Below are positions 9,261-31,500 of a DNA stretch of 64,000 nucleotides, one piece after another (within the stretch, counting starts at the first letter, position 1; each line of letters starts with the position of its first letter). The position numbers and the translations under genes were made by a program. This stretch comes from Antechinus flavipes. Taxonomy: Eukaryota. Under the pieces are notes generated by a model. It did no database searches. It was not told the origin of the DNA and was given only the letters and a program-made list of their open reading frames with translations. The stretch is from contig NC_067400.1 in NCBI RefSeq assembly GCF_016432865.1, positions 619,380,001 through 619,444,000 of the forward strand, written 5' to 3'.

Positions 9261-10012
9261 ATTGAGGTACAGTTAACAAAATATTAAGGAAACAAGTTCA
9301 GTGACTCTGGATTAAGAACTGCTGCTAGAACTTTAAAGATGAACTAAGACCTAGAGAAGGTAAATCAACTTTTTATAGAATTATAGGAGTCAGAGGTAGA
9401 TCGTCTGGTCTGATACTTTACAGATTTTATTTTTAATTATTAAATTTTATCTTTTTCAACTACCACTTTTTTTTTTTTTGCGTGGCTCCCCACCCCCCAC
9501 TAGGAAAAAAAAAGAAAAGCAAAACATTTGTAATTATTGGTCTCCTTTATTTCAAAAACAAGGGACTAGCTTGATATGGGGCTTCGATGCAGAAGGATCC
9601 GAGTTCAAATGCTCCCTCAGGTACGAGACGGTATTTTCATCACTTAACCTCACCTGGAAAATGGGGGCTTTAGGTCCATGTCCACCAAGGTCCCTTTCTG
9701 CTGTGCGTCTATGATCTTATGGAAACTGAGGAGAGAGAAAGAAGTGGCCGTGGCCAGGTTTACGCAGGGAATCATGTCAGGCTCCCTGCGGATCCTGGGC
9801 TGGCTCAGACCCCGTCTTGAGCGCGGGCCTGAGAAAAGCCTTTTCAGCATCCTTTTGGAATCTAAGGGGTTACTGTGTTCTGGGTGTGGGTGGTGGCCGG
9901 CCTCGGCTCCACTGTTTGCTTTTCTATCTCGCCCGGCCCCTGGTACCTGGATAAAAGGACCCAATGCCCTCTGTCCCGACTTTCCTCCCGGGCCCTCCCG
10001 TCCTTAGCCACA

Positions 10013-13000
10013 ATGATCTTGGTCCTTGGGCTCCTCTGTATCCTAGTTGCCCCTGGAGGTGAGTAGAGGGGTTTCTCCGGGGGGAGATGTCTGCCTGCCC
10101 TTCTATGTTGTGGCTCCCCTCTTTCTCTTCCCTGGAAGCTCTGGGTCCGTGTTCCAGCCCCACCCTGGACTTGAGATATGATGGGGGCCCCTCCGAGCTC
10201 CCCCGAGCCTCCGTTTCTTATGGGATGTTGGACACAATGATCTCTAAGGGGTCTTTCCGGCGCTGATCTTCTGTGATCTCAAGAATTCTCTCAGATCTGA
10301 GGGAGCTCTCTGGGACTCGGTCTCCTCCAAAAATGAGGGGGTGGATTCTCTCCCGTGACCCTCAGATTCTCCCTCTCATGGTCGCCCCGGCCTCTCCTCC
10401 CCTTCCGAACCCCAGCCCCTGCTCCCTCTGCCCAACACGCCTTCCCGCTGGCCTCCCCACTCCCATTTACCCTCTGTCTTGACCCAGAATGATAGCACTG
10501 GATTCCAACCGAGAGAACTGGGTTCTGGAGCAAACGACTGCTCTCTCAACTTGGGTCATGGCTTAAAAATCTCTGGGTCTTCTACGGCTCCTCTGTAAGC
10601 TGAGGATGACGACCTTGGTGACCTCTAAAGTTCAGGCCAGCTTAAAATCCTATTTTCCTGTTGGTGTATGACTGNNNNNNNNNNNNNNNNNNNNNNNNNN
10701 NNNNNNNNNNNNNNNNNNNNNNNNNNNNNNNNNNNNNNNNNNNNNNNNNNNNNNNNNNNNNNNNNNNNNNNNNNNNNNNNNNNNNNNNNNNNNNNNNNNN
10801 NNNNNNNNNNNNNNNNNNNNNNNNNNNNNNNNNNNNNNNNNNNNNNNNNNNNNNNNNNNNNNNNNNNNNNNNNNNNNNNNNNNNNNNNNNNNNNNNNNNN
10901 NNNNNNNNNNNNNNNNNNNNNNNNNNNNNNNNNNNNNNNNNNNNNNNNNNNNNNNNNNNNNNNNNNNNNNNNNNNNNNNNNNNNNNNNNNNNNNNNNNNN
11001 NNNNNNNNNNNNNTCTCTGCAAAATGGGGCACAAAGAGTAATCCGGGATTCTTCCTCCCTTTTTTTTGTCATGGGCTCCTTAGACGGTCTGTGGAAGTCT
11101 AGGAATCTCTTCTCAAATCCCCCTTTTTTTACTACTTGAAGGAAATGATAGATGTTCAGGGTGCAGTTCTCTCCCCGCCACGAGCCCCGCGTTAAGAACT
11201 CCCGGATGGATGCATCTCTGACCGCGTCACCACTGGGAGCCTCTGATCCCGGGCCACGGGGAGCGGGCGGCCCCTGCCAGTTTCTGGGCCCGTCCCCCTC
11301 CTGTGCGGTGGAGGGGAGCGGGCCAGTGTCTCCCATCACGGTCTCCCACGACTCTCTTCTCCAGCTTCCAGCTCCAATCGGACGACATGCCTGTCCTGCT
11401 CCGACCCGGGAAAGTGCCACGAGATCACGTGCTCCCTGAACCAGAGCTTCTGCCTTCTCAACTACTCCGGCTCCGGTGCGGGGAAGGCCCTGGGGAGGGG
11501 GGCCGGTGGGGGCAGGGACGGGAGGGGCCTGGGAGCAGCCCCCGGATTTAGGGACGGGGAGGGAATGGCCAGGAAGGGGAAGGGCCGGGTGAGAGGTCGG
11601 GGGCAGGGGGGGAGGCGGCGTTTTGGAATGGGAGGGAGGGGGGCCTCTGATCGCACCCCCTGATGCTGTCCCCCCACCGCTCCACCCGCAGACAAAGAAC
11701 TCTTGAAGAACCTCTGCATGGATAAGCAGACTTGCTGGGATTATGTGCACCAGCTGAACAATATGTCCCATACCAACGTCTCCTGTTGCCAAGGAAACTG
11801 CTCAGGTATGGTCAGCTCCAAGGGGAGGAGGGAAGGGGGAGGACCGGGGTGCCCCAGGAGGAGGACCACAGTGCCTCAGGGGGAGGATCACAGTGCCTCA
11901 GGGGGAGGACCAGAGTGCCCCAGGAGGAGGACCACAGTGCCTCAGGGGGAGGACCAGAGTGCCTCAGGGGGAGGACTAGAGTGCCTCAGGGGGAGGACCA
12001 CAGTGCCTCAGGAGGAGGACCAGAGTGCCTCAGGGGGAGGACCAGAGTGCCTCAGGGGGAGGACCAGAGTGCCCCAGGAGGAGGACCACAGTGCCCCAGG
12101 GGGAGGACCACAGTGCCTCAGGGGGAGGACTTCGGGGGCCCTAGGAGGAGGAGGAATCTCCCGAGGGGAGGGGTGGAGTCCCAGCCACTGACTGAACCTG
12201 ACTGTGACAGGAAGTTCTGGAGAACTTTTAGGCCCTGCCCCCTCCCCCTCCTGCCTCTAAGCCCCCTCCTCGCTCTCTCCGCAGAACCCACCACCACCTC
12301 AGGGGAACACAAGAACACCACCTGTTTCTCCTGCCCAGACTCTGGGCCCTGCCACAGCTTCCTCTGTCCTGCCGGGAAGGACACCTGCCTCAGCATGGTG
12401 GAGGCCCAAGGTGAGTGGCCGGAGTTGCCCCGGAGCTCCCTGGGGGCCCACGAGCGCCCTTTCCTGGCCAGGGCAGAACTCCTGGGCCGGCCGTCCTTGG
12501 AGCCGGGACTGCTGTTGGTGCAAAGGCCTGTGCGGGGACGGGGAGGAGCCTCCCTCGTGTCCCCCCCGCTGAAGCCCAAGGGGATCTCTGACTCCCTCCG
12601 TGGCCTGCAGAGAGTCCCAGCCGCCTTCCAGAGCCCGGAGAGACAGAGACAGAGACGCAGAGAGAGCTGAGAGACAGAGGCAGAGCAGGGGGAGACAGGA
12701 GGGGAACGGGACAGAGAGACAGGGAGGAGATAGTAGGGGGGACGGGGAGGAGAAAGCCCGAAGGGAAAAGGAGGCAGAGGCAGAGCAGGATGGGGGAGAG
12801 ACGGAGGAACGCCGAGTCACAAGTCTCCAGTTGGAATTCTGATTCTGTTTAATTTGTCAGGCGTCTAGCGATGGCTCTCTTTGGCAGCCTGTGAGCCCGG
12901 GGCCACTGGGTGCAAACCGAGCCCCCCTCCCCCTCCGGGGCTCAGGCTCAGTGTGAAGGGGGATTTGGACCGGAGGCCTCCTAAGGTCCTTATGATCCCA

Positions 13001-14549
13001 GAGACAGGAGGCACGTGGGGAGGAAGGATGGCGGAAGGAAGCACAGGGGAGAAAGAACAAGGATTGCCGGGGCCCCTGGGAGGGGGGGGTGGGGAGGGGT
13101 TCGGGCACCCGCTTCCTGTCCCGGGGGACACTTCCCCCCCAAGGCCACTGGCGGCTGAGAGGAGGAAGGGAGCCCGGGGGAGGTCCCAGCTGCTGGCCTC
13201 CGGCTGAGCTCCGTCCCCTCCCCCCGCTCTCCCCCCAAGGTGACTTTCGGGGGAAGGACAAGCCTGTCTTCAGAAGGCAGGGCTCCTGCGTGGCGCCGGG
13301 GGACTGCCGGCCCGGGGTTTACAGCCTGTCTTACAGCCCCAGCTGGAGCTTCTGGGCGAATGTCACCTGCTGCAGCGGCGGCCACTGCGGTGAGCCCTCC
13401 CAGCCAGGTACGTGTGCCCGGGCAGGGCGGGGGCAGCGAGAGAGAGAGAAACGGCTCAGGGGGGTCAGGGGGCAGCGAGAGAGGGAGAAACGGCTCAGGG
13501 GGGTCGGGGGCCAGTGAGAGAGGGAGAAACGGCTCAGGGGGGTCGGGGGGCAGTGAGAGAAGGAGAAACGGTTAAGGGGGATCAGGGGGGTTGGGAGGGC
13601 AGGCCCATGAGACAGCCCCCCACCTTCGGTGCTGCTCCCCAGGACCAGATGCCCCTTAGCACCAACCTCCTGAAGGGCGGGTGTGTGGGGCGTAGGGTGT
13701 CTGAGAGCACGGAAGCCAGGGACCGGCCTCCGAGACTCCGGGGAGCCTTCTCTGAGGGGTTCCTCTCCTGTACCCCCCAGAGTCCCTGCCGAAGGGTACC
13801 GCCAGTGACTTCCTGTGTCCCGTCTGCTCCCCAAACGAGCCCTCCTGTGATGAAAACTCATACATGCTCTGCTCTCGAGGAGAGACTTCTTGTGTTAGCG
13901 TGAACGTGGCTCAGCTCGGAGGTAACGGGCATGGGAGGAAGGAGGGAGAGACGATGGAGAGGCAAGAGGGTTTGGGGGCCCCCAGCCAGGAGGGCCTGGG
14001 ACTGGACGTAGGGAAGAGGGAGCTGCTCAGTCTCTGGACAAGTAGCCCTTCCCCCTTTGCCCATCCATCTTTAAAATGAAGGGATAGAGTCCCAGCCCTG
14101 AAGTCGGGAGGACCTGAGTTCAAATCTGGTCTCAGACACTTAACGCATCCTAGGGACCCTGGGCAAGTCACTTAACCCCAGTTGACTCAGCAAAACAGAC
14201 AAAGAAATAAATGAATAAAATGACGGCATCAGACCTGAAGGTCCTGGCTGGTGCTCCGGGAGGGGCCATTTTCTGCCCCCGGGCTGGTGGGCTCCAAACT
14301 CCCCAATCCATCCTCTCCCCAGGGAATCAGAGAAGCCTCTTCCGAGGGTGCGGCTCGAAGGACCTCTGCCAGCTGCCCGAGAACCTCACCCTGGGTCTGG
14401 ACTACCAGCTTGTCGGGAAGCCCAACTGCAGCTCCTCCCGGCGGGCCGTGCTGGGCTCCAAGTGCCGGCACAACGCAGCCGCTGGCCCTGGGGGAGGCGC
14501 TCTCCTCCCGGCCCTGCTGGCCGCGGGGATGGCCGCTTGGCTGGCCTAA
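10013..14549 (+). CDS. Unnamed GPI-anchored Ly6/uPAR-family protein with three LU domains (about 310 aa, 7 exons)
   Basis: Exons 10013-10058, 11365-11475, 11692-11805, 12285-12410, 13240-13407 (alternative donor after 13389), 13781-13921, 14323-14549. All introns are GT-AG, phase 1; total 933 nt open to TAA. Kozak gccacaATG, signal peptide MILVLGLLCILVAPGA, LU cysteine spacing (CLSC..C..C..C / C..C..CCQGNC; CFSC../CCSGGHC; CPVC../RGCGSKDLC), GPI-type tail NAAAGPGGGALLPALLAAGMAAWLA. Confidence 0.88.
10675..11013. other. Assembly gap (339 N) in intron 1 of the LU gene
   Basis: Run of N. Confidence 1.
11837..12131 (+). repeat. 22-nt minisatellite (GGGGGAGGACCACAGTGCCTCA), about 13 copies, LU gene intron 3
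   Basis: Direct tandem units visible. Confidence 0.9.
13428..13585 (+). repeat. About 39-nt tandem repeat x4, LU gene intron 5
   Basis: gggggcagcgagagagagagaaacggctcaggggggtca repeated. Confidence 0.8.
14060..14215 (+). mobile_element. WSINE1-like tRNA-derived SINE
   Basis: ggaggacctgagttcaaatctggtctcagacacttaac...ctgggcaagtcacttaacccc followed by an A-rich tail. Confidence 0.8.
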
Positions 14550-14707
14550 GCCTTCCCACCACCCTCCCCAGCCCAGCTAGGAGCAGCCGCCTGTTCTGAC
14601 AGCAGGGGCTCACCTCGAGTCTAGAATCCTTCAGAGCCTGCTGGGACAAACCCCAGCTCGGAGGACCCCGCCCCAAATCTCAGAACCCCGAGGCGTGCAC
14701 AGCAGCC

Positions 14708-14713
14708 AATAAA
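14708..14713 (+). terminator. Polyadenylation signal of the three-LU-domain gene
   Basis: AATAAA 159 nt after the stop codon. Confidence 0.7.
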
Positions 14714-15311
14714 TTATACATCGGTCAGTTTCCTCAAACGGCCAATGTCTCTTCTCAACTTCTCTCCCTCCCTCTCCCGCTCGGCTCGTCCTTCACACCT
14801 GCGCTGGGTCCTCGGCTCCTCTGGGAATTTTTAGTCCCCAAGGGGCAGCCTTTGAGCCTGACATTCTCTTTGAAGACTGAGGAGATGGGGCCTGGGGCTG
14901 CTTGGGAGGAGAAGGCAGCTGGGGAGTCTTGGGGTTCAGGAACCTCGAATTGCTGTTAGGCTAAACTGAACCCATGTTTTATTCAGGACCCGGTACTGGT
15001 CCTAGGCTGCCTGAAAGTGGCTTGGGCTGAGCTGATGGGCCGATGGGCTCCGTGGCTAGACAGGACGCCTTACCTCCCATTCCGGGAAATCCTCCTGGAG
15101 CACCTCCAACAGCAGCAGCTCTCCACCTGGAACTTCTCAAGGCGTCGCATATACCATACACAGGCACAGAATCATGGGAGGGCTTGGGAGTCGGGACTTT
15201 GGTTCAAATCCTAGGTCGTTTCCCTACTCCATCTCACTTCCTAGCTCTGTGATCTTGGACTTAATCTCTTTAGACTTGTTTCCTCATCTGTCCAATGAGG
15301 ATGCCTTAATT

Positions 15312-16165
15312 TCTCAGTACTTCTAAACCTCCAGTCTCGCTCCGACCCTTTCCATTCAGTTGAAAAAACCAAGGACTAAAGAAGGAAACGAACACGGCAA
15401 AGACCACCTAGGCAAATTTTGTTAGAAGGTGCAGAGAGAGAAAAATGATGAGAGAGACAGAGACAGACAGATAGACAGACACACACACACACAGCCAGAG
15501 AGAGAGAAAAACTACAGGGAGAAGAATTTCTCAGCACTTCTAAACCTTCAGTCTCACTCCAACCATTTCTATTCATTTAAAAAAACCAGGACTAAAGAAG
15601 GAAATGGACCCGGCAAAGACCACCCAGGCGAATTTTGTTAGAAGGTGCAGAGAGAGAAAAATGATGAGAGAGACAGAGACAGAGAGATAGACAGACACAC
15701 ACACACACACACAGCTAGAGAGAGAGAAAAACTACAGGGAGAAGAATTTCTCAGCACTTCTAAACCTTCAGTCTCACTCCAACCATTTCCATTCATTTAA
15801 GAAAAACAGGACTAAAGAAGGAAATGGACCCGGCAAAGACCACCCAAGCGAATTTTGTTAGATAAGGAAGAGAGGGAAAAATGATGAGAGAAACAGAGAC
15901 AGAGACAGAGACAGATAGACAGACACACAGCCAGAGAGAGAGAGAAACAACAGGAGAAGGATTTCTCAGCACTTCTAAACCTCCAGTCTCACTCCAGCCA
16001 TTTCCATTCAATTGAGGAAACCAGGACTAAAGAAGGAAATGGACACGGCAAAGATCACCCAGGCAAATTTTGTTAGGAGAGGCAGAGAGGAAAATGATGA
16101 GAGAAACAGACAGACAGACAGACACACACACACACACAGCCAGAGAGAGAAAAACACAAGGAGAA
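15312..16165 (+). repeat. About 217-bp tandem repeat x4 with internal GA/CA microsatellites
   Basis: Units start (tctcagYacttctaaacc) at 15312, 15529, 15749 and 15964. Confidence 0.92.
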
Positions 16166-16554
16166 GAAGAGGAAAAAGGGAGAAGAGAGAGAGAGAGAGA
16201 CAGAGAAAAAGAAAGAGACGGGAAAGGGAGGAGAGGTAGAGAGGAGAGAGAAAGGTGAATAGGACAAGGAGAGAGACATTCATGTATGTGACTGACATCT
16301 CTCTAGTAGGCCGTGGGTTTCCCTAGACTGTGAATTCCTTAAACATAAAGAGACCATGTCTTATTTACCTCAGTTTCCTGTATGGAACCCTGTGCTCAGT
16401 GGTAGTTCAGTAACTGTTTGCTGAAAGAATCAAGGGCCAATCATTTGGTCAGTGGGGGGACCCATCTCTCCCTTCCCCTCCCCCCTCGGGCTCCACTCAT
16501 GAGGTCACCCCAGTGGGCATTGTTGGCCTGGGTCCCTGCTGGTGTTACCCGGCT

Positions 16555-16693
16555 GGGCGGGGCCAGCCAATCAGCCGCTAGTCCCTCTTATAATGGCCCC
16601 TAGCAACGGGGTATGAGTCCAGGCAAACGGGGAGAGACCCCGTGGGCGGGGAGAGTCTGAGGGGTGTGGGAAATTCCTCTGTGAATGTGAGTT
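16555..16693 (+). promoter_or_regulatory. Candidate IRGC promoter and non-coding first exon (GC box, CCAAT, RFX X-box half-site, donor at 16687)
   Basis: GGGCGGGGCC at 16555, CCAATCAGC at 16567, CCCTAGCAAC at 16598-16607, AAT|GTGAGTT at 16684-16693; about 3 kb upstream of the IRGC ATG. Confidence 0.55.
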
Positions 16694-17989
16694 GATTTGG
16701 GGGGAAATGGTACCCAATGTGGGTGAGAAAGGGCAATTCCGAGGGAAGAAGGGAAGAGAAGTCCCGGGTACTTAGACGCTAGGTCCAATTCTCCCGGTTG
16801 CCCTTTGGATCCCCGTAGTCTCAGCCACCCAGAGCCAATCACACGGTGGAGGGGAGGAGGGAGCCCAGGGTTAGGTAGCAAGAGCTCAACCTCATTAAGT
16901 TCTCCAACAGACCCCGAAAACTTGGGAGAGGAGAGGTCTGGTCAGGGCCAAGAGGAAAGAGTCCGCTTCTCGGTCTAGTCTTGATGGAGCCGCACGGCTG
17001 CCCCTCGGTTTCTCGAGATGAGAGACCGTCGGGTTTGAGGCAGAGTCCATATGGGCCTGGGCTGAGCTCTCTTGCCTGTGCTAGCTGTCTCAGAGATGCT
17101 AGGCCCTTCGTGGAAACGAGGGCAGGAGAAATCGGGGGGCTGTGGCCAAGTCCCACTCCACAGTTCCTTCTCCAGACCCCAGCTGTTAGCTCTGTTGCTC
17201 CGATGCCCCAGACCCTGCTCAGAAAAGAGAAATCCCCGGTGTGGGGAGTTTGAGCCCAATCCCCTCTATCAATTCAGATAGCCCGTGGAGAGAAGTTTGG
17301 GGTGTGGGAAGAAGGGTTTCCTATGAGGTCCCCACCTGAATACCTGGAGCTCTCTACGAAGGGCTAGATCCTAGACGTGGGAGTCCAAGGCCCTTTGTCC
17401 CACGGGCCCTCCGGACTGCTTATTCAAACACTCGGAACTTTTCGAGGTCGAGAGAGGCGGAGGGAGGTGGTGGCCGGGCCGTGGCCAGGCCAGGGTGGGA
17501 GGGAACCAGCCTTAGCCCCTGAAGTATCTCAAGTGAGGAGGGGTCGGGGTGAGTGGGAGAGGGGCAGAGAAGCGAGACTGTGATTCTGTTGACTTTTTAT
17601 GGACTGTGGCTTGCTGCTTAGACAATCCCGGGCCCCCCATGCACCAGAGGAGGGGAAGACAGCTTATAAGTGTTGGAAGGGTGTGGTTGGGGTCCCCTTC
17701 CTTCATTTCCATACTCAATCATACTCAAACCCCACCTCCAAAAAAAAAAAAACACAAACAAACAAAAACTCCAGAGCCATCCATGAGACTGGGGGAAGGA
17801 ATGGGACGTAGAGCTAATTCCCCCGTCTCTTTGGAGAGACTGACTGATAAACTGTCACTCCTGGACCCCATGCTTACAGGGGAGAAATAGTCGGAGTTCC
17901 CCACATTCTATTGCTTATATATCTCCTCTCATCTCAGACTTCCTGGTCTTCCATCTCCTGGGGACCCTGAGATAGAAACAAAGGCAAAA

Positions 17990-18565
17990 TGGAAGGGGAT
18001 CCAGGAAGAGAGGAAGACATAGGGTGGGGAGATCCAATGGAAAGGAACCCAGAGAGGAAGAGATGGGATGGGGAGATCCAATGGAGGAGGACCCAGAAAG
18101 AGAGGAAGACCTGGGATGGGGAGATCCAGTGGAAGGGGACCCAGAGAGGAAGACATGGGATGCAGAGATCCAATGGAAGGGAACCCAGAGAGGAAGACAT
18201 GGGATGGGGAGATCCAATGGAAGGGAACCCAGAGAGGAAGACATGGGATGGGGAGATCCAATGGAAGGGAACCCAGAGAGGAAGACATGGGATGGGGAGA
18301 TACGGTGGAAGGGGACCCAGAGAGGAAGACATGGGATGCAGAGATCCAATGGAAGGGAACCCAGAGAGGAAGACATGGGATGGGGAGATCCAGTGGAAGG
18401 GGACCCAGAGAGGAAGACATGGGATGGGGGAGATCCAGTGGAAGGGGACTCAAAAAGAGAGGAAGACATGGGATGCAGAGATCCAATGGAAGGGAACCCA
18501 GAGAGGAAGACATGGGATGGGGAGATCCAGTGGAAGGGAACCCAGAGAGGAAGAGATGGGATGGG
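17990..18565 (+). repeat. 44-nt minisatellite (GGGAACCCAGAGAGGAAGACATGGGATGGGGAGATCCAATGGAA), about 13 copies
   Basis: Period 44 (e.g. 18179 to 18223); accounts for the six repetitive ORFs in the track. Confidence 0.92.
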
Positions 18566-19578
18566 GAATTCCAATGGGTGGGCCATCTCAGGGAATCATC
18601 CCTCCCTTTGGTAATAAAGGGGAGAAATGGGGGTCAGAACCATGGGCTCAGAGATCTCTCAGACAGGAAGGGACTTTTAGTCTGACCTCTAGTATTTTAC
18701 AGAGAAGGAAACTGAGGTCTAGAGTATGAGAGGATTAAAAGCTGGGATCCACATGCCCTATCATTGGCGCCATGTTGGGGTCAGACCAAACTGCCTCGTG
18801 GGTCTAAATGTGAAAGGCTGTGGGAATGACAATAGTTCTGGAGTTAAAAGATCCCACCTGAGTGGTGAGATCTCCTATCCTTCATCTTCTGTGGCCTCAG
18901 TTTCCCTTCCCTGTAGGGACTGGCTGAAGCTGGTTCTCCCAGTCCTTCCCCAGTCTTAATGTCTACTGCTTCCCGAGCCAGCTGCCCACTGATTTGCTCT
19001 GAGAGTCCCTCCATTGCTTTCTTTACCTGTCGGGAAACTGGGAGAAGAATCCCTGCTTTCCCGGCAAAGATGGTAGGCAGCGAGACTGAAATGAGGATGG
19101 GGCAAGGCCTCCAGAAACCCCAGATGTAAGGAGGTCCCGCACCCTCACGCAGACGGGAGCGTCTGGGGGCCGGGCAGGGGGACGAGAAGGCAGAGCCCGA
19201 GGAGAGAAGAGGGGAACAGGATCCGCAAGCGAGCGGCCGAGCTGGGAGCCGTTTCAGGCCCATCCGTCAGGGACGGGCCGCCCGGCCAAGGGCCCGGTCA
19301 GAGACGCCGGGTCAGAGACCCCGCCATCCGCCGGTGCTTCCGAGGCTACCTCCCGTAGCGTAGCCTGGGTAAGGGAGGGGACGGGGCGTTTGCTGGGCCG
19401 CTGGGGCCGGCCGCCTTTCCGCTAACCGCGTCTCCGTCCCCCCTCCCCGTCTCTCTCTCTCTCTCTCTCTCCCTCCCGCCCGTCTCAGGGCCTAGGTGGT
19501 GTGAGCGGCCTGCCCCCTACCCCAAGGAGCACACGCATCGAGACTCCCCCACTCCCCCCCACTCTCCCCAGGGGCGCA

Positions 19579-20976
19579 ATGGCGTCCAAGTCACAAGCCC
19601 CCCCGACCGAGGAGGAGAGCACCATCCTCATGGCTAAGGAAGAGCTCGAAGCTCTTCGGACGGCCTTCGAGCTGGGGGATATCCCGAAGGCTGCCTCCCG
19701 CCTCCGGGAGCTTCTGGGCTCAGCTGAGAGTAGCCGCCTCGATGTGGGCGTGACCGGCGAGTCCGGGGCCGGCAAGTCTTCCTTGATCAACGCCCTTCGA
19801 GGGATCGGGGCCGAGGATCCCGGCGCGGCTCGGACTGGCGTCATCGAGACCACAACCCAGCCCACCCCCTACCCCCACCCCCAGCTGCCTGAGCTCATGC
19901 TGTGGGACCTGCCAGGGGCCGGCTCACCCGGCTGCCCAGCCGACAAGTACCTGAAGCAGGTAGACTTTGCTCGCTACAATTTCTTCCTCCTGGTCTCACC
20001 CCGCCGCTGTGGGGCCGTGGAGACCCGGCTGGCGACCGAGATCCTCCGTCAGGGCAAGAAATTCTACTTCATCCGCACCAAGGTGGATGAGGACCTGGCG
20101 GCTTCTCGCACCCAGCGCCCCTCGGGCTACAGCGAGAGCGCTGTCTTACAGGAGATCCGAGACCACTGCGCGGAGCGCCTGCGAGCCGCCGGCGTCCAGG
20201 ACCCCCGGATCTTCCTCGTGTCCAACCTGTCGCCGGCCCGCTACGACTTCCCTCTGCTGGTGGCCACCTGGGAGCGGGAGCTGCCGGCCCACCGCCGCCA
20301 CGCCGGGCTGCTGTCCCTGCCCGACATCTCCCTCCAGGCCCTGCAGAAGAAGAAGGATGCCCTGCAGGAGCAGGTGCTGAAGACCGCGCTGGTGTCCGGG
20401 GTCATCCAGGCCTTGCCCGTGCCCGGGCTGGCGGCCGCCTACGACGACGCCCTGCTGATCCGCTCCCTGCGGGGCTACCACCGCAGCTTCGGCCTGGACG
20501 ACGACTCCCTGGCCAGGCTGGCCGAGCAGGTGGGCAAGCAGGCCGGCGACCTGCGCTCCGTGATCCGCTCGCCCCTGGCCACCGAGGTCTCGCCGGAGGC
20601 GGTGCTGCGCATGTACGCCCAATCATCGGACGGGGCCATGCGCGTGGCCCGGGCCTTCGAGAAGGGCATCCCCGTGTTCGGGACACTGGTGGCCGGGGGG
20701 ATCTCCTTCGGGACCGTCTACACCATGCTACAGGGCTGCCTTAACGAGATGGCCGAGGACGCCCAGCGTGTCCGGATCAAAGCCCTGGAAGAGGAGGTCA
20801 CCTCCCCTGGCTCCGACGCCCGCCTCGACGTCGCCAGCGGGCCCGGGTTGGAGAAGAGGGGGGCAGGCGAGGGCGGCGGGGAGGATCCTCCAATCTCAGC
20901 CCGCCGGAAGCTTGGACTGCTGCTCAAGTACATTCTGGAGAGCTGGAAAAAACGGGATGGGGTCGAAGACAAATAA
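19579..20976 (+). CDS. IRGC: Immunity-related GTPase cinema (interferon-inducible GTPase 5), intronless CDS, 465 aa
   Basis: MASKSQAPPTEEESTILMAKEELEALRTAFE...GESGAGKS...WDLPG...RTKVD...RKLGLLLKYILESWKK closely follows recalled human IRGC. Acceptor at 19487-19488; AATAAA at 20972-20977. Confidence 0.96.
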   Translation: MASKSQAPPTEEESTILMAKEELEALRTAFELGDIPKAASRLRELLGSAESSRLDVGVTGESGAGKSSLINALRGIGAEDPGAARTGVIETTTQPTPYPHPQLPELMLWDLPGAGSPGCPADKYLKQVDFARYNFFLLVSPRRCGAVETRLATEILRQGKKFYFIRTKVDEDLAASRTQRPSGYSESAVLQEIRDHCAERLRAAGVQDPRIFLVSNLSPARYDFPLLVATWERELPAHRRHAGLLSLPDISLQALQKKKDALQEQVLKTALVSGVIQALPVPGLAAAYDDALLIRSLRGYHRSFGLDDDSLARLAEQVGKQAGDLRSVIRSPLATEVSPEAVLRMYAQSSDGAMRVARAFEKGIPVFGTLVAGGISFGTVYTMLQGCLNEMAEDAQRVRIKALEEEVTSPGSDARLDVASGPGLEKRGAGEGGGEDPPISARRKLGLLLKYILESWKKRDGVEDK

Positions 20977-21134
20977 AAACGGCCACCTCTCCCCCAAAGA
21001 AAGAAAACCCCCCTCCTGACCACTCCACCCCACCATCCCCCATTCCCATTCCCCCACCCCTGTCCCCTGTCCCTACCAAAAAAAAATTCATGTGAAGAAA
21101 CCAATGGAAGGCTCCCGACTGCTTCCAGACCGGC

Positions 21135-21520
21135 CGGGGCCCGGCGCGGGAGGGAGGGAGGGGGGAGTGTTGGGATGGAGGGGGGGAGGGGGAAGAGAGG
21201 GAGAGGTGTTGGGATGGCGCGGGGGGGGGAGGGGGAAGAGAGGGAGGGGTGTTGGGATGGAGCGGGGGGGAGGGGGAAGGGAAGGGGAGAGGGGTGTAGG
21301 GATGGAGCGGGGGCGGGGAAGGGAGGGAGGGGTGTTGGGATGGAGTGGGGGGGAGGGGGAAGAGAGGGAGGGGTGTTGGGATGGAGCGGGGGGGAGGGGG
21401 AAGAGAAGGGGAGAGGGGTGTCGGGATGGAGCGGGGGCGGGGAAGGGAGGGAGGGGTGTTGGGATGGAGCGGGGGGGGGAAGGGAGGGAGGGGTGTTGGG
21501 ATGGAGCGGGGGGGGGGGGA
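21135..21520 (+). repeat. G-rich about 38-nt minisatellite (GGGTGTTGGGATGGAGCGGGGG...), G-quadruplex-prone
   Basis: About 10 degenerate copies just downstream of IRGC. Confidence 0.85.
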
Positions 21521-21810
21521 GGAGAGCCCATTCAAGGGCTGGTTTCACTTTCTCTGTCCCATAGACGCGTCCTTGCGGGGAAGGGGGCCACTAGGGAGAC
21601 GGGGATTCCCGGCGGGAAGCAAGTGTAAACGAGGGAAATTAGAACTGGGGAACCTGCAGAAAAGGCGTCCCTTTGGGGCGACCTCCCAACCCCCCAAAAT
21701 CTCTCCTTCTGTGGATTCCTAAGGGACCTTTGATGGCAATCCTCTGGCTCCACGCCAACACCCCCGCCCCCTCCTTCGAAGATTCCCCCTCCCCCTCCCC
21801 GAGGAGCCAA

Positions 21811-21960
21811 CCAATCAGCGTTCGTTTCTCAATACAATGGACCCTAGCAACAGGTCTGGCCGAGAAGCCAACAGAATCGGTGGGGATAAGATGCTCCAGC
21901 ACTAGAAGAGGAAGCACAAGAGGGGCCAGGGTCAAAGGAAGGCCCTGCTAAATGTGAGTT
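21811..21960 (+). promoter_or_regulatory. Candidate promoter and non-coding first exon of the second IRG gene (CCAAT, RFX X-box half-site, donor at 21954)
   Basis: CCAATCAGC at 21811, AATGGACCCTAGCAAC at 21836-21851, AAT|GTGAGTT at 21951-21960; same spacing as the module at 16567. Confidence 0.55.
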
Positions 21961-28390: not shown

Positions 28391-28550
28391 GGTCGGAGCG
28401 GGCCCTCGCTGGGCCTCTGCCCGCTGCAGACCCGGAGGGGGGAGGAGGCTTTCCGGGAGCCCCTCCCAGCAGGGAGGCGCTGACGGCCGCCCCCTCCTTG
28501 CCCCGAAGGTCACCATCCTCCCCACGTTGACACCTCCATCTTTCCCCTCG

Positions 28551-31500
28551 ATGGCTGCCCCGAAGACCCAGGAGTCTAAGACCACCCTGACTCTGAGCCC
28601 GGAGAAGATGGCGTCCATCGGAGAGGTCTTCCAGGGAGACAGCCTGTCCGCCACCTCCACCAAGCTGCGCTCCACCCTCCAGTCCCTGGAGAACGTGCGG
28701 CTGGACATCGCCGTCACGGGCGGGGCGGGCTCGGGCAGGTCCACCTTCGTCAACTCGCTGCGGGGCCTGGGCGACGAGGACCAGGGCTCGGCGCAGACCG
28801 GGCTGGCCGAGACCACGTCGGCCCCGACGCCGTACCCGCACCCCAAGTACCCCAACGTCATCGTCTGGGAGCTGCCCGACTTGGGGACGTCCTCCCTGCC
28901 AGCCGAGCAGTACCTGGAGAAGGTCCTGATGGGCCGCTACGATCTCTTCATCCTGCTCAGCGCGGAGCGCTTCAGCCCCGGCCACGCGCGGCTCGCGCGC
29001 GCCCTCCAGGCCCGGGACAAGCCCTGCTACCTGGTCCGCTCCAAGGTGGACGTGGACGTGGCCGCCTCCCGCCAGCGCCGACCCAGCACCTTCTCTGAGG
29101 AAGGCGTGCTCATGGACATCCGGGAAAACTGCCGTTCCTACCTGCAAGGTGAGGCCCGGGGGCGCGGGGAGGAACGTGAGGGCCGGGGACGCGGGGAGCG
29201 ATGTAGGGGGGGGAGGCGCGTGAGGGGCCGGAGACGTGGGGAGGAACGTGAGAATCCGGGGGGCGCGTGAGGGGCCGGAGACGTGGGGAGGAACGTGAGA
29301 ATCCGGGGGCGCGTGAGGGGCCGGAGACGTGGGGAGGAAAGTGAGGGCCGGGGACGCGGGGAGGAAAGTGAGAGCCCGGGGGCGCGTGAGGGGCCGGAGA
29401 CGTGGGGAGGAAAGTGAGAGCCCGGGGGCGCGTGAGGGGCCGGGGCCGCGGGGAGGAACGTGAGGGCCCGAGGGCGCGGGGAGCGATGTAGGGGGCGGAG
29501 GCGCGTGAGGGGCCAGAGACTCGGGGAGGAAAGTGAGGGCCGGGGACGCGGGAAGGAAAGTGAGAGCCCGGGGGCGCGTGAGGACCCGGGAACACTTGAG
29601 AGGCCCGGGAGCCGGAGAGCGACGTGAGGGCCCCAAGATCATGATCCCAAAGCTGGGAGGGGCAGCTCCCCAACCTTTGCCTTCCGTGGTCACTCATAGA
29701 GCCAGGGGAGCCCACAAGCACTCAGGACTGAGGCGGACCCGGTAGAAACCTCCCTGCAGATTCAGTGACAGATGGGCATGTAACCCGCACCTGGAACCTC
29801 TAGAGACAGGGAACTCACTACCTTCATATCCTAATATCAAATGGGTCCCCAAAGGGTCTGAACAGGAAGTCCTGCAACCTCAGTGACAAACGCTCAGCTT
29901 TAAGGTCTCGGAGTCTCCCCAGGAAGGATGTGGGTATCCTCAGTGTCCCAGAATAGGAAATCTCAAACCTGGAGCTCCCCAGGGGGCTATTAGCTTGGTT
30001 CATACATGAACAGCACTTCTCCCTGCCCTCAGCTTAGGCAGGTCATTCTTTTTCTCTGGAACTCAATTTCCTCATCTGGAAAAAAAGGACATTGAACTAA
30101 AAAGCCCCAAAGGGACCCCCGATGGAAACCTTTACTCCTGTACTCCCAGAAAAACAAATGATGATCTAGCCTCTGCTTGAAGACTCACGGTGATAGGGAG
30201 CTCACTACTTGCACTCACTCACTTACTTTTTTTCTCTTTTTGCTGGGGCAATTGGGGTTAAGTGACTTGCCCAGGGTCACAGAGCTGGGAAGTGTTAAGT
30301 GTCTGATATTTGAACTCGGCTCCCCTTGACTTCAGGGCTGGTGCTCTATCCACTGAGTCATCTAGCTTTCCTGAAGGGAGCCCCTTTCACTTTTGAAGAT
30401 CTCGACAGGATACATCTCTGTGTTGAGTCCACTCTTTATGTCTTCCATTCACTGACTCAGCTACAGGTGAGGGAAAGGAAAAAAAGTCTTCAAAGGATCA
30501 TGGGTTCATCCCTTTGAAGCTGGAAGGGACTGGTCTCCTCATTGTACAGATAGAGAAACAGGTCTCCACAGGGCAAGAGATCTCATTTCTTGAGATCTTA
30601 CGTAAAACAGCCAACATTGACATGCTGCTTAAAGCAAGACTCACAACACGTTTTAGAAATATTTGGGGACAGCTAGGTGGTGCAGTGGGTAGAGCACCAG
30701 CCCCGGAGTCAGGAGCACCTGAGTTCAAATCTGGTCCCAAGCACTTAGCACGTCCTAGCTGTGTGACCCTGGGCAAGTCACTTAACTCCAATTGCCTCAG
30801 GAAAAAAAATCATTTTATTCATATGCCAACCCTGGGACGAAGGTGCTGCTATTATTCCCATCTTGGAGATGGGCCGGGAGTGGGAAATTTTCCAGGGCGC
30901 TCTGATTAGTCGAAAATGCTTCCTTGTACCACTAGGAAGTGGCCTGGGTTTGCGCATTGTGTCTCCCACGGAGGGGTATGTGTTCCACGAGCCCCCACAG
31001 GTGTGTTTACTTTGTAAAAGCAGCCGGCGAGGCCACGGGTCCAAAGCAAAGTCATTTGATGAGGTCACATGGTAAGGAAAGTCCCCACGGACCCGGATCA
31101 GGCTCCCACAAGTTGCATCCGCAGTCGGGGGAGGGGGAGGGAGAAGATGCACTTGTGAAGGGGCACACGCAGACAATACGAGTGTGGCCGAGACCCGCTC
31201 TTCCCAGGGCACCAATATGTGCTCCTGTAGCTAGGCAACACATGGAGCAGGGTACCAGTGACAAGATGCTTTGCTCGCTAGCGGCCTCTTGTGGCCGACC
31301 TGTGGCCAGCACCGGCTGCTCGGGGGCAGGTAGGGCCACGGGAATTGTGGGAGTTTCTCTCACTTGCCAATTTCTGGCCTCAGTTGGAATCCTTAGTTGG
31401 GGGAGAACTTTTTTTTCTTCCTGGGAAAAAAGTTGACAATTGTCCTGCTGCAGTTTACTAGAAAGTAGATGTCCTGGGTGACCCTGGGAAAGTCACAACC

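What the first reader, a model, noticed from the sequence alone, without database searches (positions are those of the whole stretch)
16567..21960. Duplicated CCAAT + RFX X-box + donor module in front of each IRG gene
Sequence: CCAATCAGC at 16567 and 21811 is followed exactly 25 nt later by AATGG(C/A)CCCTAGCAAC (16592-16607 and 21836-21851; 15/16 identical). Each is then followed by an identical AAT|GTGAGTT donor (16684 and 21951), while the flanks are not evidently similar. Known: CCTAGCAAC is the RFX X1-box core, RFX2 and NF-Y drive spermatid genes, and IRGC is testis-expressed with a non-coding first exon. Inference: paralogous promoters and first exons from an old tandem duplication, kept under selection, so IRGC and the non-canonical IRG may be co-expressed in germ cells.
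Basis: partly seen in the sequence, partly recalled or inferred. Interest (0 to 1): 0.75.

Follow-up and report, generated by a model that had tools for sequence, protein, structure and literature searches.

The report
Twin conserved promoters of two sperm-type IRG genes
The sperm GTPase gene IRGC and the sister gene next to it each carry the same small promoter cassette (a CCAAT box, an X-box-like half-site 34-35 bases later, then a short non-coding first exon); it has been kept in mammals and a lizard, but which proteins read it is still untested.

Summary
CCAATCAGC, then CCCTAGCAAC at the same 25-nt gap, then AAT|GTGAGTT, occur at 16567 and 21811 and nowhere else in the window.

It is not chance. 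In 10-kb flanks of IRGC from eight mammals (two dasyurids, wombat, echidna, zebra, bat, cattle, a murid), the pattern CCAAT-N19-28-CYTAGMAAC occurs 15 times. All hits are on the gene strand, at the same two syntenic places. Shuffles give 0.03.

- **Spacing:** the CCAAT-to-half-site offset is 34-35 nt in 14 of 15 mammalian copies.
- **Lizard:** a related lizard gene has the same cassette (offset 34, donor 113 nt after the CCAAT).
- **Paralogy:** the two echidna copies still align through the spacer, so the copies are paralogous.
- **Loss:** the murid, which lacks the sister gene, lacks copy 2. In zebra the sister gene is a pseudogene and the copy-2 donor is lost.
- **Splicing:** annotated models in bilby, mole-rat and zebu splice these first exons onto the expected coding exons.

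The named factors are not supported as stated. The X-box is a half-site, not the 14-bp RFX2 palindrome. Mouse Irgc1 is absent from the published table of RFX2 ChIP targets and Rfx2-knockout-responsive genes, and is listed as a CREM target. A CRE-like octamer lies upstream of copy 1 in all eight mammals.

No RNA reads could be laid, so the start site and the sister gene's tissue are untested. This is an ordinary kind of element, unusually well preserved.

The parts
16500..16507 (+). CRE-like octamer TGAGGTCA upstream of module 1
   Evidence: It has one mismatch to TGACGTCA. An octamer with at most 1 mismatch lies 38-67 nt upstream of the CCAAT in module 1 of all 8 mammals, and is a perfect TGACGTCA in Equus. 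Mouse Irgc1 is listed as a CREM ChIP target downregulated in the Crem knockout.
16518..16524 (+). SOX-like CATTGTT between the CRE-like element and the CCAAT box
   Evidence: It is present in the three marsupials, and as CTTTGTT in echidna. Placentals have CATTATTG at the matching place. Bekpen 2005 reported a weak Sox element in the mouse and human Irgc promoter.
16567..16575 (+). Module 1 CCAAT box (AGCCAATCAGC), NF-Y type
   Evidence: CCAAT is invariant in all 8 mammals at this syntenic place.
16592..16607 (+). Module 1 X-box-like half-site AATGGCCCCTAGCAAC (core CCTAGCAAC 16599-16607)
   Evidence: It is conserved in 8 of 8 mammals; wombat has TAGAAAC. The right half RGYAAC is met and the left half is not.
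16608..16686 (+). 3' part of the IRGC non-coding exon 1 (5' limit unknown), ending at donor AAT|GTGAGTT
   Evidence: A GTGAGT donor lies 120-122 nt after the CCAAT in 6 of 8 mammals, and at 113 nt in the lizard. The exon sequence is conserved between marsupials and placentals. The bilby and Fukomys IRGC models use this exon.
16687..19489 (+).
   Evidence: The donor was read and the acceptor ...cccgtctcag|GG.
19490..20976 (+). IRGC exon 2 with the whole CDS (ATG 19579, stop 20974-20976)
   Evidence: Pfam IIGP 1.8e-92; 97% identical to wombat IRGC. Bilby IRGC model residues 22-75 map to 19486-19644.
21811..21819 (+). Module 2 CCAAT box (AACCAATCAGC), 835 nt after the IRGC stop
   Evidence: CCAAT is invariant in the 7 mammals that keep module 2 and absent in Mastomys.
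21836..21851 (+). Module 2 X-box-like half-site AATGGACCCTAGCAAC
   Evidence: C[CT]TAGCAAC is conserved in 7 mammals at the syntenic place.
21852..21953 (+). 3' part of the first exon of the IRGC paralogue (5' limit unknown), ending at donor AAT|GTGAGTT
   Evidence: The donor is conserved in marsupials and echidna, present at a shorter distance in bat and cattle, and lost (GT to GA) in Equus. The bilby paralogue model ends its first exon at the equivalent donor. The Bos indicus model starts 17 nt after the X-box and splices to the paralogue coding exon.
28509..29170 (+). Paralogue exon 2: inferred acceptor 28508|28509, CDS start 28551, IIGP domain; the 3' end is approximate
   Evidence: The acceptor ccccgaag|GTCACC was read. 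Pfam IIGP 6.6e-60. The bilby model continues K|CHH.., which matches T|GT CAC CAT at 28509.

Best explanation
The two modules are the proximal promoters and short 5' non-coding first exons of two tandem paralogues: IRGC (CDS 19579-20976) and its sister IRG gene (CDS from 28551). The whole unit was copied when the gene duplicated: CCAAT box, X-box-like half-site 34-35 nt later, an exon of roughly 80-100 nt, a GTGAGT donor, an intron, and then the coding exon. This happened before mammals diverged. A lizard gene sister to both mammalian genes has the same layout, so the cassette is older than the duplication seen in mammals.

Inferred mechanism: NF-Y binds the CCAAT box and a winged-helix RFX-family protein binds the CCTAGCAAC half-site about three helical turns away. 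Together they fix a nucleosome-free core promoter, and transcription starts at or near the X-box. In IRGC, a CRE-like element upstream adds CREM-dependent post-meiotic activation.

Shown here: the sequence, its conservation, its paralogy, its loss together with the sister gene, and annotation-level splicing. Inferred only: which proteins bind, the exact TSS, and germ-cell expression of the sister gene.
For: The motifs sit at identical spacing and occur only at these two places in the window. There are 15 hits in 8 mammals, all at the two syntenic sites on the gene strand, against 0.03 expected; the offset is 34-35 nt in 14 of 15. CCAAT and the X-box are the invariant blocks while the spacer drifts. 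The two echidna copies align over about 105 nt (score 34 against 13.3 +/- 2.2), and the Antechinus copies over 53 nt. Lizard locus L021 has GACCAAT, CCCTGGCAAC at offset 34, a donor at +113 and an acceptor just before the ATG. Its gene is sister to the IRGC+paralogue clade. Mastomys has module 1 but neither the paralogue nor module 2. The Equus paralogue hits fall in three frames, and the module 2 donor is GT to GA.

Gene models support the splicing. Bos indicus P0220 starts MPGRWDILSQLCCL, encoded from 17 nt after the module 2 X-box up to the donor, then continues into the paralogue exon. Bilby P0163 reads through module 2 to the equivalent donor and then CHH.., which matches 28509. Bilby P0124 joins exon 1 to the 19490 equivalent. 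Fukomys P0007 starts MGPSN, which is ATG GGT CCT AGC AAC.

IRGC is testis- and spermatid-expressed and has no ISRE or GAS elements (PMC9232189; PMC1297648).
Against: All Logan contigs fetched were colinear with the genome.

The TSS is unknown. Two gene models (Fukomys, bilby) put the X-box, or the whole of module 2, inside the transcript. In that case the CCAAT box may lie closer to the TSS, or downstream of it, than is usual for NF-Y.

Wombat module 1 has TAGAAAC, and Eptesicus module 1 has a 7-nt shorter spacer, so neither the Y position of the half-site nor the spacing is absolutely required. Equus keeps the module 2 CCAAT and X-box although its paralogue is broken. There is no canonical poly(A) hexamer between the IRGC stop and module 2 in dasyurids or placentals. 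Fused IRGC+paralogue models also exist, so read-through transcription cannot be excluded.
Confidence: 0.75

Rival explanations
1. One reading: RFX2 together with NF-Y drives both genes in spermatids through a canonical X-box.
For: CCTAGCAAC holds the RGYAAC half of the RFX consensus in 15 of 16 copies. [quoted passage not shown] IRGC is expressed from the round-spermatid stage.
Against: Mouse Irgc1 is absent from S1 Table of PMC4498915, which lists RFX2 ChIP-seq targets and genes changed in Rfx2-/- testis at P21 and P30. In S2 Table it is marked only as a CREM target. The RFX2 motif found there is a 14-bp inverted repeat, and none of the 16 copies has a full left half. The murid proxy (Mastomys) does carry the intact module, so loss of the site in rodents does not explain the absence.
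Confidence: 0.15
2. The conserved CYTAGCAAC(N)G block is read by a factor other than RFX (for example a MYB-type factor at CAACNG, or an unknown germ-cell factor), or it acts in the RNA as a 5'UTR element. NF-Y at the CCAAT box would be the only correctly named factor.
For: AACNG follows in 15 of 16 copies. Two gene models place the X-box inside the transcript, and in therians it holds an ATG (AATGG) that opens a short uORF in Antechinus, MAPSNGV*. No binding data exist.
Against: Conservation extends 5' of the MYB core (CC/CT-TAG), and the base after AAC varies freely between G, A, T and C. That pattern fits an RFX half-site better than YAAC(G/T)G. Echidna and the lizard lack the ATG, and Eptesicus module 1 deletes it, so a translational role is not conserved.
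Confidence: 0.15
3. Module 2 serves IRGC rather than the sister gene, as a 3' flanking enhancer, terminator or insulator, or as an internal exon of IRGC read-through transcripts.
For: It lies only 450-870 nt after the IRGC stop, with no canonical poly(A) hexamer in between in dasyurids and placentals. Its CCAAT and X-box persist in Equus, where the paralogue is a pseudogene. Fused IRGC+paralogue models exist in possum, sheep, lynx and Myotis.
Against: Mastomys keeps an intact IRGC but has no module 2 and no paralogue. Module 2 has its own donor, which gene models splice to the paralogue exon. It is homologous to module 1, a promoter. In Equus the donor is already lost, as expected for decay.
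Confidence: 0.07
4. The module is an MHC-type W/SXY enhanceosome site (RFX5 complex, CREB, NF-Y, CIITA/NLRC5), a relic of the immune regulation of IRG genes.
For: CCTAGCAAC is the MHC-type half-site, like the RFX5 motif MA0510.1. CCAATCAG is the reverse of the MHC Y box. A CRE-like element is nearby in module 1.
Against: [quoted passage not shown] Here the CCAAT lies upstream of the X-box and X1 is inverted relative to Y. The CRE-like element lies 38-67 nt upstream of the CCAAT, not next to X1. IRGC is not interferon-inducible.
Confidence: 0.03
5. Chance similarity, or copies of an interspersed repeat.
For: Each short motif alone is not rare: at least 2 CCAATCAGC occur in 20 of 100 shuffles.
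Against: The linked pattern is expected 0.03 times and found 15 times, only at syntenic sites. There are no further copies in the 64-kb window.
Confidence: 0.01

Closest known systems
CCAAT-box (NF-Y) TATA-less proximal promoters
   Same: The CCAAT pentamer is invariant, with purine-rich 5' flanks (AG/AA/GA/GG-CCAAT) and mostly C/G-A/G-G 3' flanks. It lies close upstream of a short first exon and is conserved across species.
   Different: The distance to the TSS is unknown and may be shorter than the usual -60 to -100. It is always paired at 34-35 nt with a second conserved element.
RFX X-box promoters of spermatid and cilia genes (RFX2 targets; Kistler et al. 2015, PMC4498915)
   Same: An RGYAAC-containing element at or near the TSS of a spermatid-expressed gene.
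   Different: It is a half-site only, not the 14-bp inverted repeat. The mouse orthologue is not among the RFX2 ChIP targets or the Rfx2-/- responsive genes.
MHC class I/II W/SXY module (RFX5 complex, CREB, NF-Y)
   Same: The same three kinds of element (X1-type CCTAGCAAC, CRE-like, CCAAT/Y) lie within about 110 nt, and the X-Y distance is fixed.
   Different: The order and relative orientation differ: CCAAT is upstream, X1 is inverted relative to Y, and the CRE is not next to X1. There is no interferon response, and the genes are germ-cell genes.
CREM-dependent post-meiotic promoters
   Same: Module 1 has a CRE-like octamer in all 8 mammals. Mouse Irgc1 is a CREM-bound gene that depends on Crem.
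   Different: Module 2 lacks the CRE-like octamer except in echidna, so the two paralogues probably differ in this input.
Irg gene architecture described by Bekpen et al. 2005 (5' untranslated exon plus one long coding exon)
   Same: A non-coding first exon with its own promoter, and the ATG at the start of the long exon.
   Different: Interferon-inducible Irg promoters carry ISRE and GAS elements. The IRGC-type genes carry the CCAAT/X-box cassette instead. That paper reports only a weak Sox element for Irgc.

Membership tests
NF-Y CCAAT box | Invariant CCAAT pentamer with the consensus flanks RRCCAAT(C/G)(A/G) | tested here: met
   CCAAT is present in 16 of 16 copies and the two bases 5' are purines in most (AG, AA, GA, GG). 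The 3' flank is CAG, CGG, AAG, TGG or GGG.
NF-Y CCAAT box | Position about -60 to -100 from the TSS, and NF-Y occupancy | not testable with these tools
   No TSS or ChIP data were available. Gene models suggest the TSS is at most about 58 nt downstream of the CCAAT, or even upstream of it.
RFX X-box, full site (RFX1-3 dimer type) | Right half-site RGYAAC | tested here: met
   15 of 16 copies; the wombat module 1 copy has AGAAAC.
RFX X-box, full site (RFX1-3 dimer type) | Inverted left half GTNRCC at 0-3 nt, giving the 14-bp inverted repeat found in RFX2 ChIP peaks | tested here: not met
   The best left half scores 3-4 of 5 specified positions in all 16 copies and never 5 of 5. The motif definition comes from PMC4498915. 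The GTNRCC-N0-3-RGYAAC consensus itself is from my own knowledge (Emery et al. 1996).
RFX2-dependent spermiogenesis gene set | An RFX2 ChIP-seq peak at the promoter and/or altered expression in Rfx2-/- testis | tested here: not met
   Literature check for the mouse orthologue: Irgc1 has 0 occurrences in S1 Table of PMC4498915. [quoted passage not shown]
MHC W/SXY module | Fixed order and orientation S-X1-X2-Y, with Y an inverted CCAAT downstream of X | tested here: not met
   The CCAAT lies upstream of the X-box on the gene strand. On the other strand X1 is inverted relative to Y. The definition comes from PMC7866136.
MHC W/SXY module | X2 (CRE) directly next to X1 | tested here: not met
   The CRE-like octamer lies 38-67 nt upstream of the CCAAT, and in module 2 it is present only in echidna.
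CREM-dependent post-meiotic promoter | A CRE or CRE-like octamer in the proximal promoter, with CREM occupancy and dependence | tested here: met
   Module 1 only: at most 1 mismatch to TGACGTCA in 8 of 8 mammals. Mouse Irgc1 is listed as a CREM ChIP target downregulated in the Crem knockout. Module 2 does not meet this except in echidna.
Promoter plus 5' non-coding first exon | A conserved splice donor downstream, joined to the coding exon in transcripts | tested here: inconclusive
   The donor is conserved, and the NCBI gene models P0220, P0163, P0124 and P0007 use these junctions.
Paralogous (duplicated) regulatory module | Sequence homology between the two copies beyond the binding motifs | tested here: met
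   The echidna copies align over about 105 nt including the spacer, about 9.5 SD above shuffles. The Antechinus copies align over 53 nt, about 7.7 SD above shuffles.

The most novel reading that the evidence does not exclude
The CCAAT - 34/35 nt - CCTAGCAAC half-site cassette would be a dedicated, roughly 300-million-year-old 'Y-X' promoter syntax that marks the sperm-type branch of the IRG family. It would be read by NF-Y plus a non-RFX2 RFX protein, together with CREM at IRGC. That is the same three factor families as the MHC enhanceosome, in a different geometry. The germ-line IRG genes and MHC genes would then share a rewired regulatory logic, and the enigmatic sister IRG (a likely dead GTPase in dasyurids) would be a co-regulated spermatid partner of IRGC.
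Probability: 0.1. Interest if true: 0.6.

Novelty: new member of a known kind. Interest (0 to 1): 0.4.

Why it matters
IRGC is needed for sperm fibrous-sheath integrity and male fertility in mice (PMC9232189). In the papers I read, its promoter is described only as lacking interferon elements and holding a weak Sox site (PMC1297648).

A two-motif cassette kept at fixed spacing from a lizard to placentals, and kept twice, gives a precise and cheap target for mutagenesis. It could explain why this one IRG lineage is expressed in spermatids rather than induced by interferon.

It also gives the first regulatory argument that the unnamed sister gene, lost in the murid examined and not annotated in primates, shares IRGC's expression programme. 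That bears on whether it acts as a partner or regulator of IRGC. The kind of element is ordinary; the value lies in the depth of conservation and in the testable prediction.

Tried and rejected
**RNA evidence**
A second try beside them was blocked by the cap.
- I looked for spliced mRNA contigs through exact-protein look-ups. L015/L016 (cattle), L017 and L018 are colinear with the genome or unspliced. L020 is a genomic contig whose gene groups with the squamate clade in the tree. No transcript evidence was obtained.
- The paralogue clusters hold no full-length Logan ORFs, only exon-sized ones.

**Readings rejected**
- A TATA-box reading of TATAATGG in module 1: module 2, echidna and the lizard lack it, Eptesicus deletes it, and the Fukomys model starts its CDS at that ATG.
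- The ATG in AATGG as a conserved start or uORF: it is absent in echidna and the lizard.
- The MHC SXY reading: the order and orientation are wrong.

**Other**
- The P0197 look-up found nothing, because it is an isoform not on record.
- Literature searches for Irgc with RFX2, and for an NF-Y/RFX composite motif, gave nothing specific.

Mastomys served as the murid proxy.
The paralogue was searched only as the unbroken ORF window:28311-29267, region 81-285, by reference. A 90-nt junction was translated locally only.
- No letters of 18686-18724 were sent to any database, pattern, paper or findings search. Whole-locus files that contain them were touched only by local scripts: regex scans for promoter motifs, and local BLAST/tblastn in which they served as subjects. 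The tblastn and the tandem-repeat scan excluded them.


Full report
**1. What is in the window**

Reading the sequence confirms every coordinate in the finding.
- CCAATCAGC lies at 16567-16575 and at 21811-21819.
- AATGG(C/A)CCCTAGCAAC lies at 16592-16607 and at 21836-21851.
- AAT|GTGAGTT has its GT at 16687 and at 21954.
- Each motif occurs only at these two places in the 64 kb.
- Between the motifs the spacer is only 4/16 identical, and the wider flanks do not align.

ORF 19579-20976 is IRGC: Pfam IIGP 1.8e-92, and 97% identical to wombat IRGC. The ORF that holds 28551 onward is a second IRG gene, IIGP 6.6e-60.

Earlier notes of this scan name the genome as yellow-footed antechinus and the second gene as an old IRGC paralogue. 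The exact-protein look-up agrees: the IRGC protein is on record in GCA_016432865.2, and the paralogue cluster lists Antechinus flavipes on a contig of that size.

**2. Is it more than chance?**

I fetched IRGC with 10-kb flanks from these species:
- Sminthopsis (L001)
- Antechinus (L002)
- wombat (L003)
- echidna (L004)
- plains zebra (L005)
- big brown bat (L006)
- cattle (L011)
- the murid Mastomys (L019)

The pattern CCAAT-N19-28-C[CT]TAG[CA]AAC occurs 15 times in these 342 kb counting both strands. Every hit is on the gene strand. Every hit is at one of two syntenic places: upstream of IRGC, or 450-2600 nt after its stop. Markov shuffles give 0.03 hits.

The offset from the CCAAT to the RGYAAC half-site is 34 or 35 nt in 14 of 15 copies. 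Eptesicus module 1 has a 7-nt deletion.

In alignments, the CCAAT and the X-box are the invariant blocks, and the spacer drifts.

**3. The two copies are paralogous, and the cassette is older than mammals**

The echidna copies align over about 105 nt, spacer included (score 34 against 13.3 +/- 2.2 in shuffles). The Antechinus copies align over 53 nt (25 against 11.5 +/- 1.7). Placental module 2 resembles echidna module 1 in the spacer (CCAATCGGT.CCCAGG...).

A lizard gene (Hemicordylus, L021) has the same layout:
- GACCAAT
- CCCTGGCAAC at offset 34
- a TGG|GTGAGTT donor 113 nt after the CCAAT
- an intron of about 450 nt
- an acceptor just before the ATG

In a maximum-likelihood tree this lizard gene's clade is sister to the mammalian IRGC+paralogue clade (support 86/94). 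A turtle gene groups with the paralogue (95/88). So the cassette predates the split of these genes, or at least the mammalian radiation.

**4. Link to the genes**

- Mastomys has module 1 (CCAAT 7615, X-box 7647, cag|gtgagt donor) but has neither a paralogue nor module 2.
- In zebra the paralogue gives hits in three different frames at lower identity, so it is a pseudogene. Module 2 keeps its CCAAT and CTTAGCAAC, but the donor has changed from GT to GA.
- Bos indicus XP_070627286.1 (P0220) begins MPGRWDILSQLCCL. That is encoded by the ATG 17 nt after the module 2 X-box up to TGCCT|GTGAGTG, and it then continues in the paralogue coding exon.
- The bilby paralogue model (P0163) reads NQPISIQISLQWTLATG through module 2. 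It ends its first exon at the equivalent of AAAT|GTGAGT and goes on with CHH.., which matches T|GT CAC CAT at window 28509.
- The bilby IRGC model (P0124) joins an exon 1 homologue (..KLLCD.., against Antechinus ..KFLCE) to the stretch that maps at 19486-19644. This fixes the acceptor at 19489|19490.
- The Fukomys IRGC isoform X1 (P0007) starts MGPSN, which is ATG GGT CCT AGC AAC, inside the X-box.

These are annotation-level data, not reads. They also suggest that the TSS lies at or upstream of the X-box in at least some species.

**5. Which factors?**

The CCAAT boxes fit the NF-Y consensus flanks.

The X-box is a half-site. RGYAAC is met in 15 of 16 copies, but no copy has a full GTNRCC left half. 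JASPAR distinguishes a full-site RFX2 motif from a half-site RFX5 motif (PMC5838959).

Kistler et al. 2015 found a 14-bp inverted repeat at RFX2 targets, close to the TSS.
- Irgc1 is absent from their S1 Table, which covers RFX2 ChIP targets and genes changed in Rfx2-/- testis.
- In S2 Table it is marked only as a CREM ChIP target downregulated in the Crem knockout.

Consistent with that, an octamer with at most one mismatch to TGACGTCA lies 38-67 nt upstream of the module 1 CCAAT in all eight mammals, and is perfect in zebra. In module 2 it is present only in echidna.

A CATTGTT/CTTTGTT motif lies between them in marsupials and echidna. This may be the weak Sox element that Bekpen et al. reported.

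So RFX2 as the driver is not supported. Another RFX member, or another factor altogether, remains possible.

The MHC W/SXY reading fails on order and orientation.

**6. What could not be done**

- All Logan contigs fetched were genomic or unspliced.
- No human or primate locus was fetched.

**7. Open points**

- No canonical AATAAA or ATTAAA lies between the IRGC stop and module 2 in dasyurids or placentals, and fused IRGC+paralogue models exist. Read-through from IRGC therefore cannot be excluded.
- The wombat X-box variant (TAGAAAC) and the shortened Eptesicus spacer show some tolerance in the cassette.

**8. Verdict**

The structural and evolutionary reading is supported. The naming of RFX2 and the claim of co-expression are not established, and for RFX2 the mouse data point the other way. 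The element is a well-preserved example of a known kind, a conserved proximal promoter cassette duplicated with its gene, and is not a new mechanism.

Noticed in passing
It explains the many overlapping ORFs at 17915-18729.
   Followed up: partly
window 53108, 53177, 53242 (minus strand): Three CCAATCAG boxes lie 65-69 nt apart on the minus strand in a region of about 69% G+C. It looks like a multi-CCAAT (NF-Y) CpG-island promoter of a minus-strand gene.
   Followed up: no
L005 (Equus quagga) 14984-16780 and 11814-11960: The IRGC paralogue gives tblastn pieces in three different frames and only 59% identity in the C-terminal block, so it is a pseudogene. The module 2 CCAAT and CTTAGCAAC are still there, but the exon 1 donor has changed from GT to GA.
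   Followed up: partly
L019 (Mastomys coucha) 11392-21392: The 10 kb downstream of the murid IRGC holds neither a paralogue nor module 2. B1-type SINE copies (CCCAGCAAC...GGCTCACAACC) lie there instead.
   Followed up: partly
P0128 (possum, 927 aa), P0213/P0222 (sheep, 861 aa), P0252 (lynx, 798 aa), P0002 (Myotis, 709 aa): Several public gene models are long enough to be fusions of IRGC and its paralogue into one protein. They are either annotation artefacts of the short intergenic gap or signs of read-through transcripts.
   Followed up: no
window 20977-21811; L005, L006, L011, L019 after the IRGC stop: There is no AATAAA or ATTAAA between the IRGC stop and module 2 in dasyurids and placentals. 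Wombat has AATAAA 25 nt after the stop. In dasyurids the only variant hexamer near module 2 is AATACA, inside the module 2 spacer.
   Followed up: partly
window 16593-16616; P0007: The ATG inside AATGG of the module opens a 7-codon uORF in Antechinus (MAPSNGV*). It is used as the CDS start in the Fukomys IRGC isoform X1 model (MGPSNRG...). It is absent in echidna and the lizard.
   Followed up: partly
L004 (echidna) 9698-10001: In echidna, module 1 lies only about 300 nt upstream of the annotated IRGC ATG (a 486-aa model) and has no GTGAGT donor within 200 nt. Either the first-exon structure differs there, or the model's N-terminal extension is wrong. The echidna paralogue is called as a single 418-aa coding exon, unlike the split therian gene.
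   Followed up: no
L003 7357-7365; L006 7929-7962: Wombat module 1 has TAGAAAC instead of TAGCAAC. Eptesicus module 1 lacks 7 nt of the spacer, giving an offset of 28 instead of 35. These are natural variants that could be used to test how strict the cassette is.
   Followed up: no
L020 (Logan SRR13336341 contig, 1901 nt): This is an unnamed contig encoding a 411-aa IRG that groups with the gecko and Hemicordylus genes in the tree. It has the same acceptor...CTTGATCCAATGG start context as the lizard locus.
   Followed up: partly
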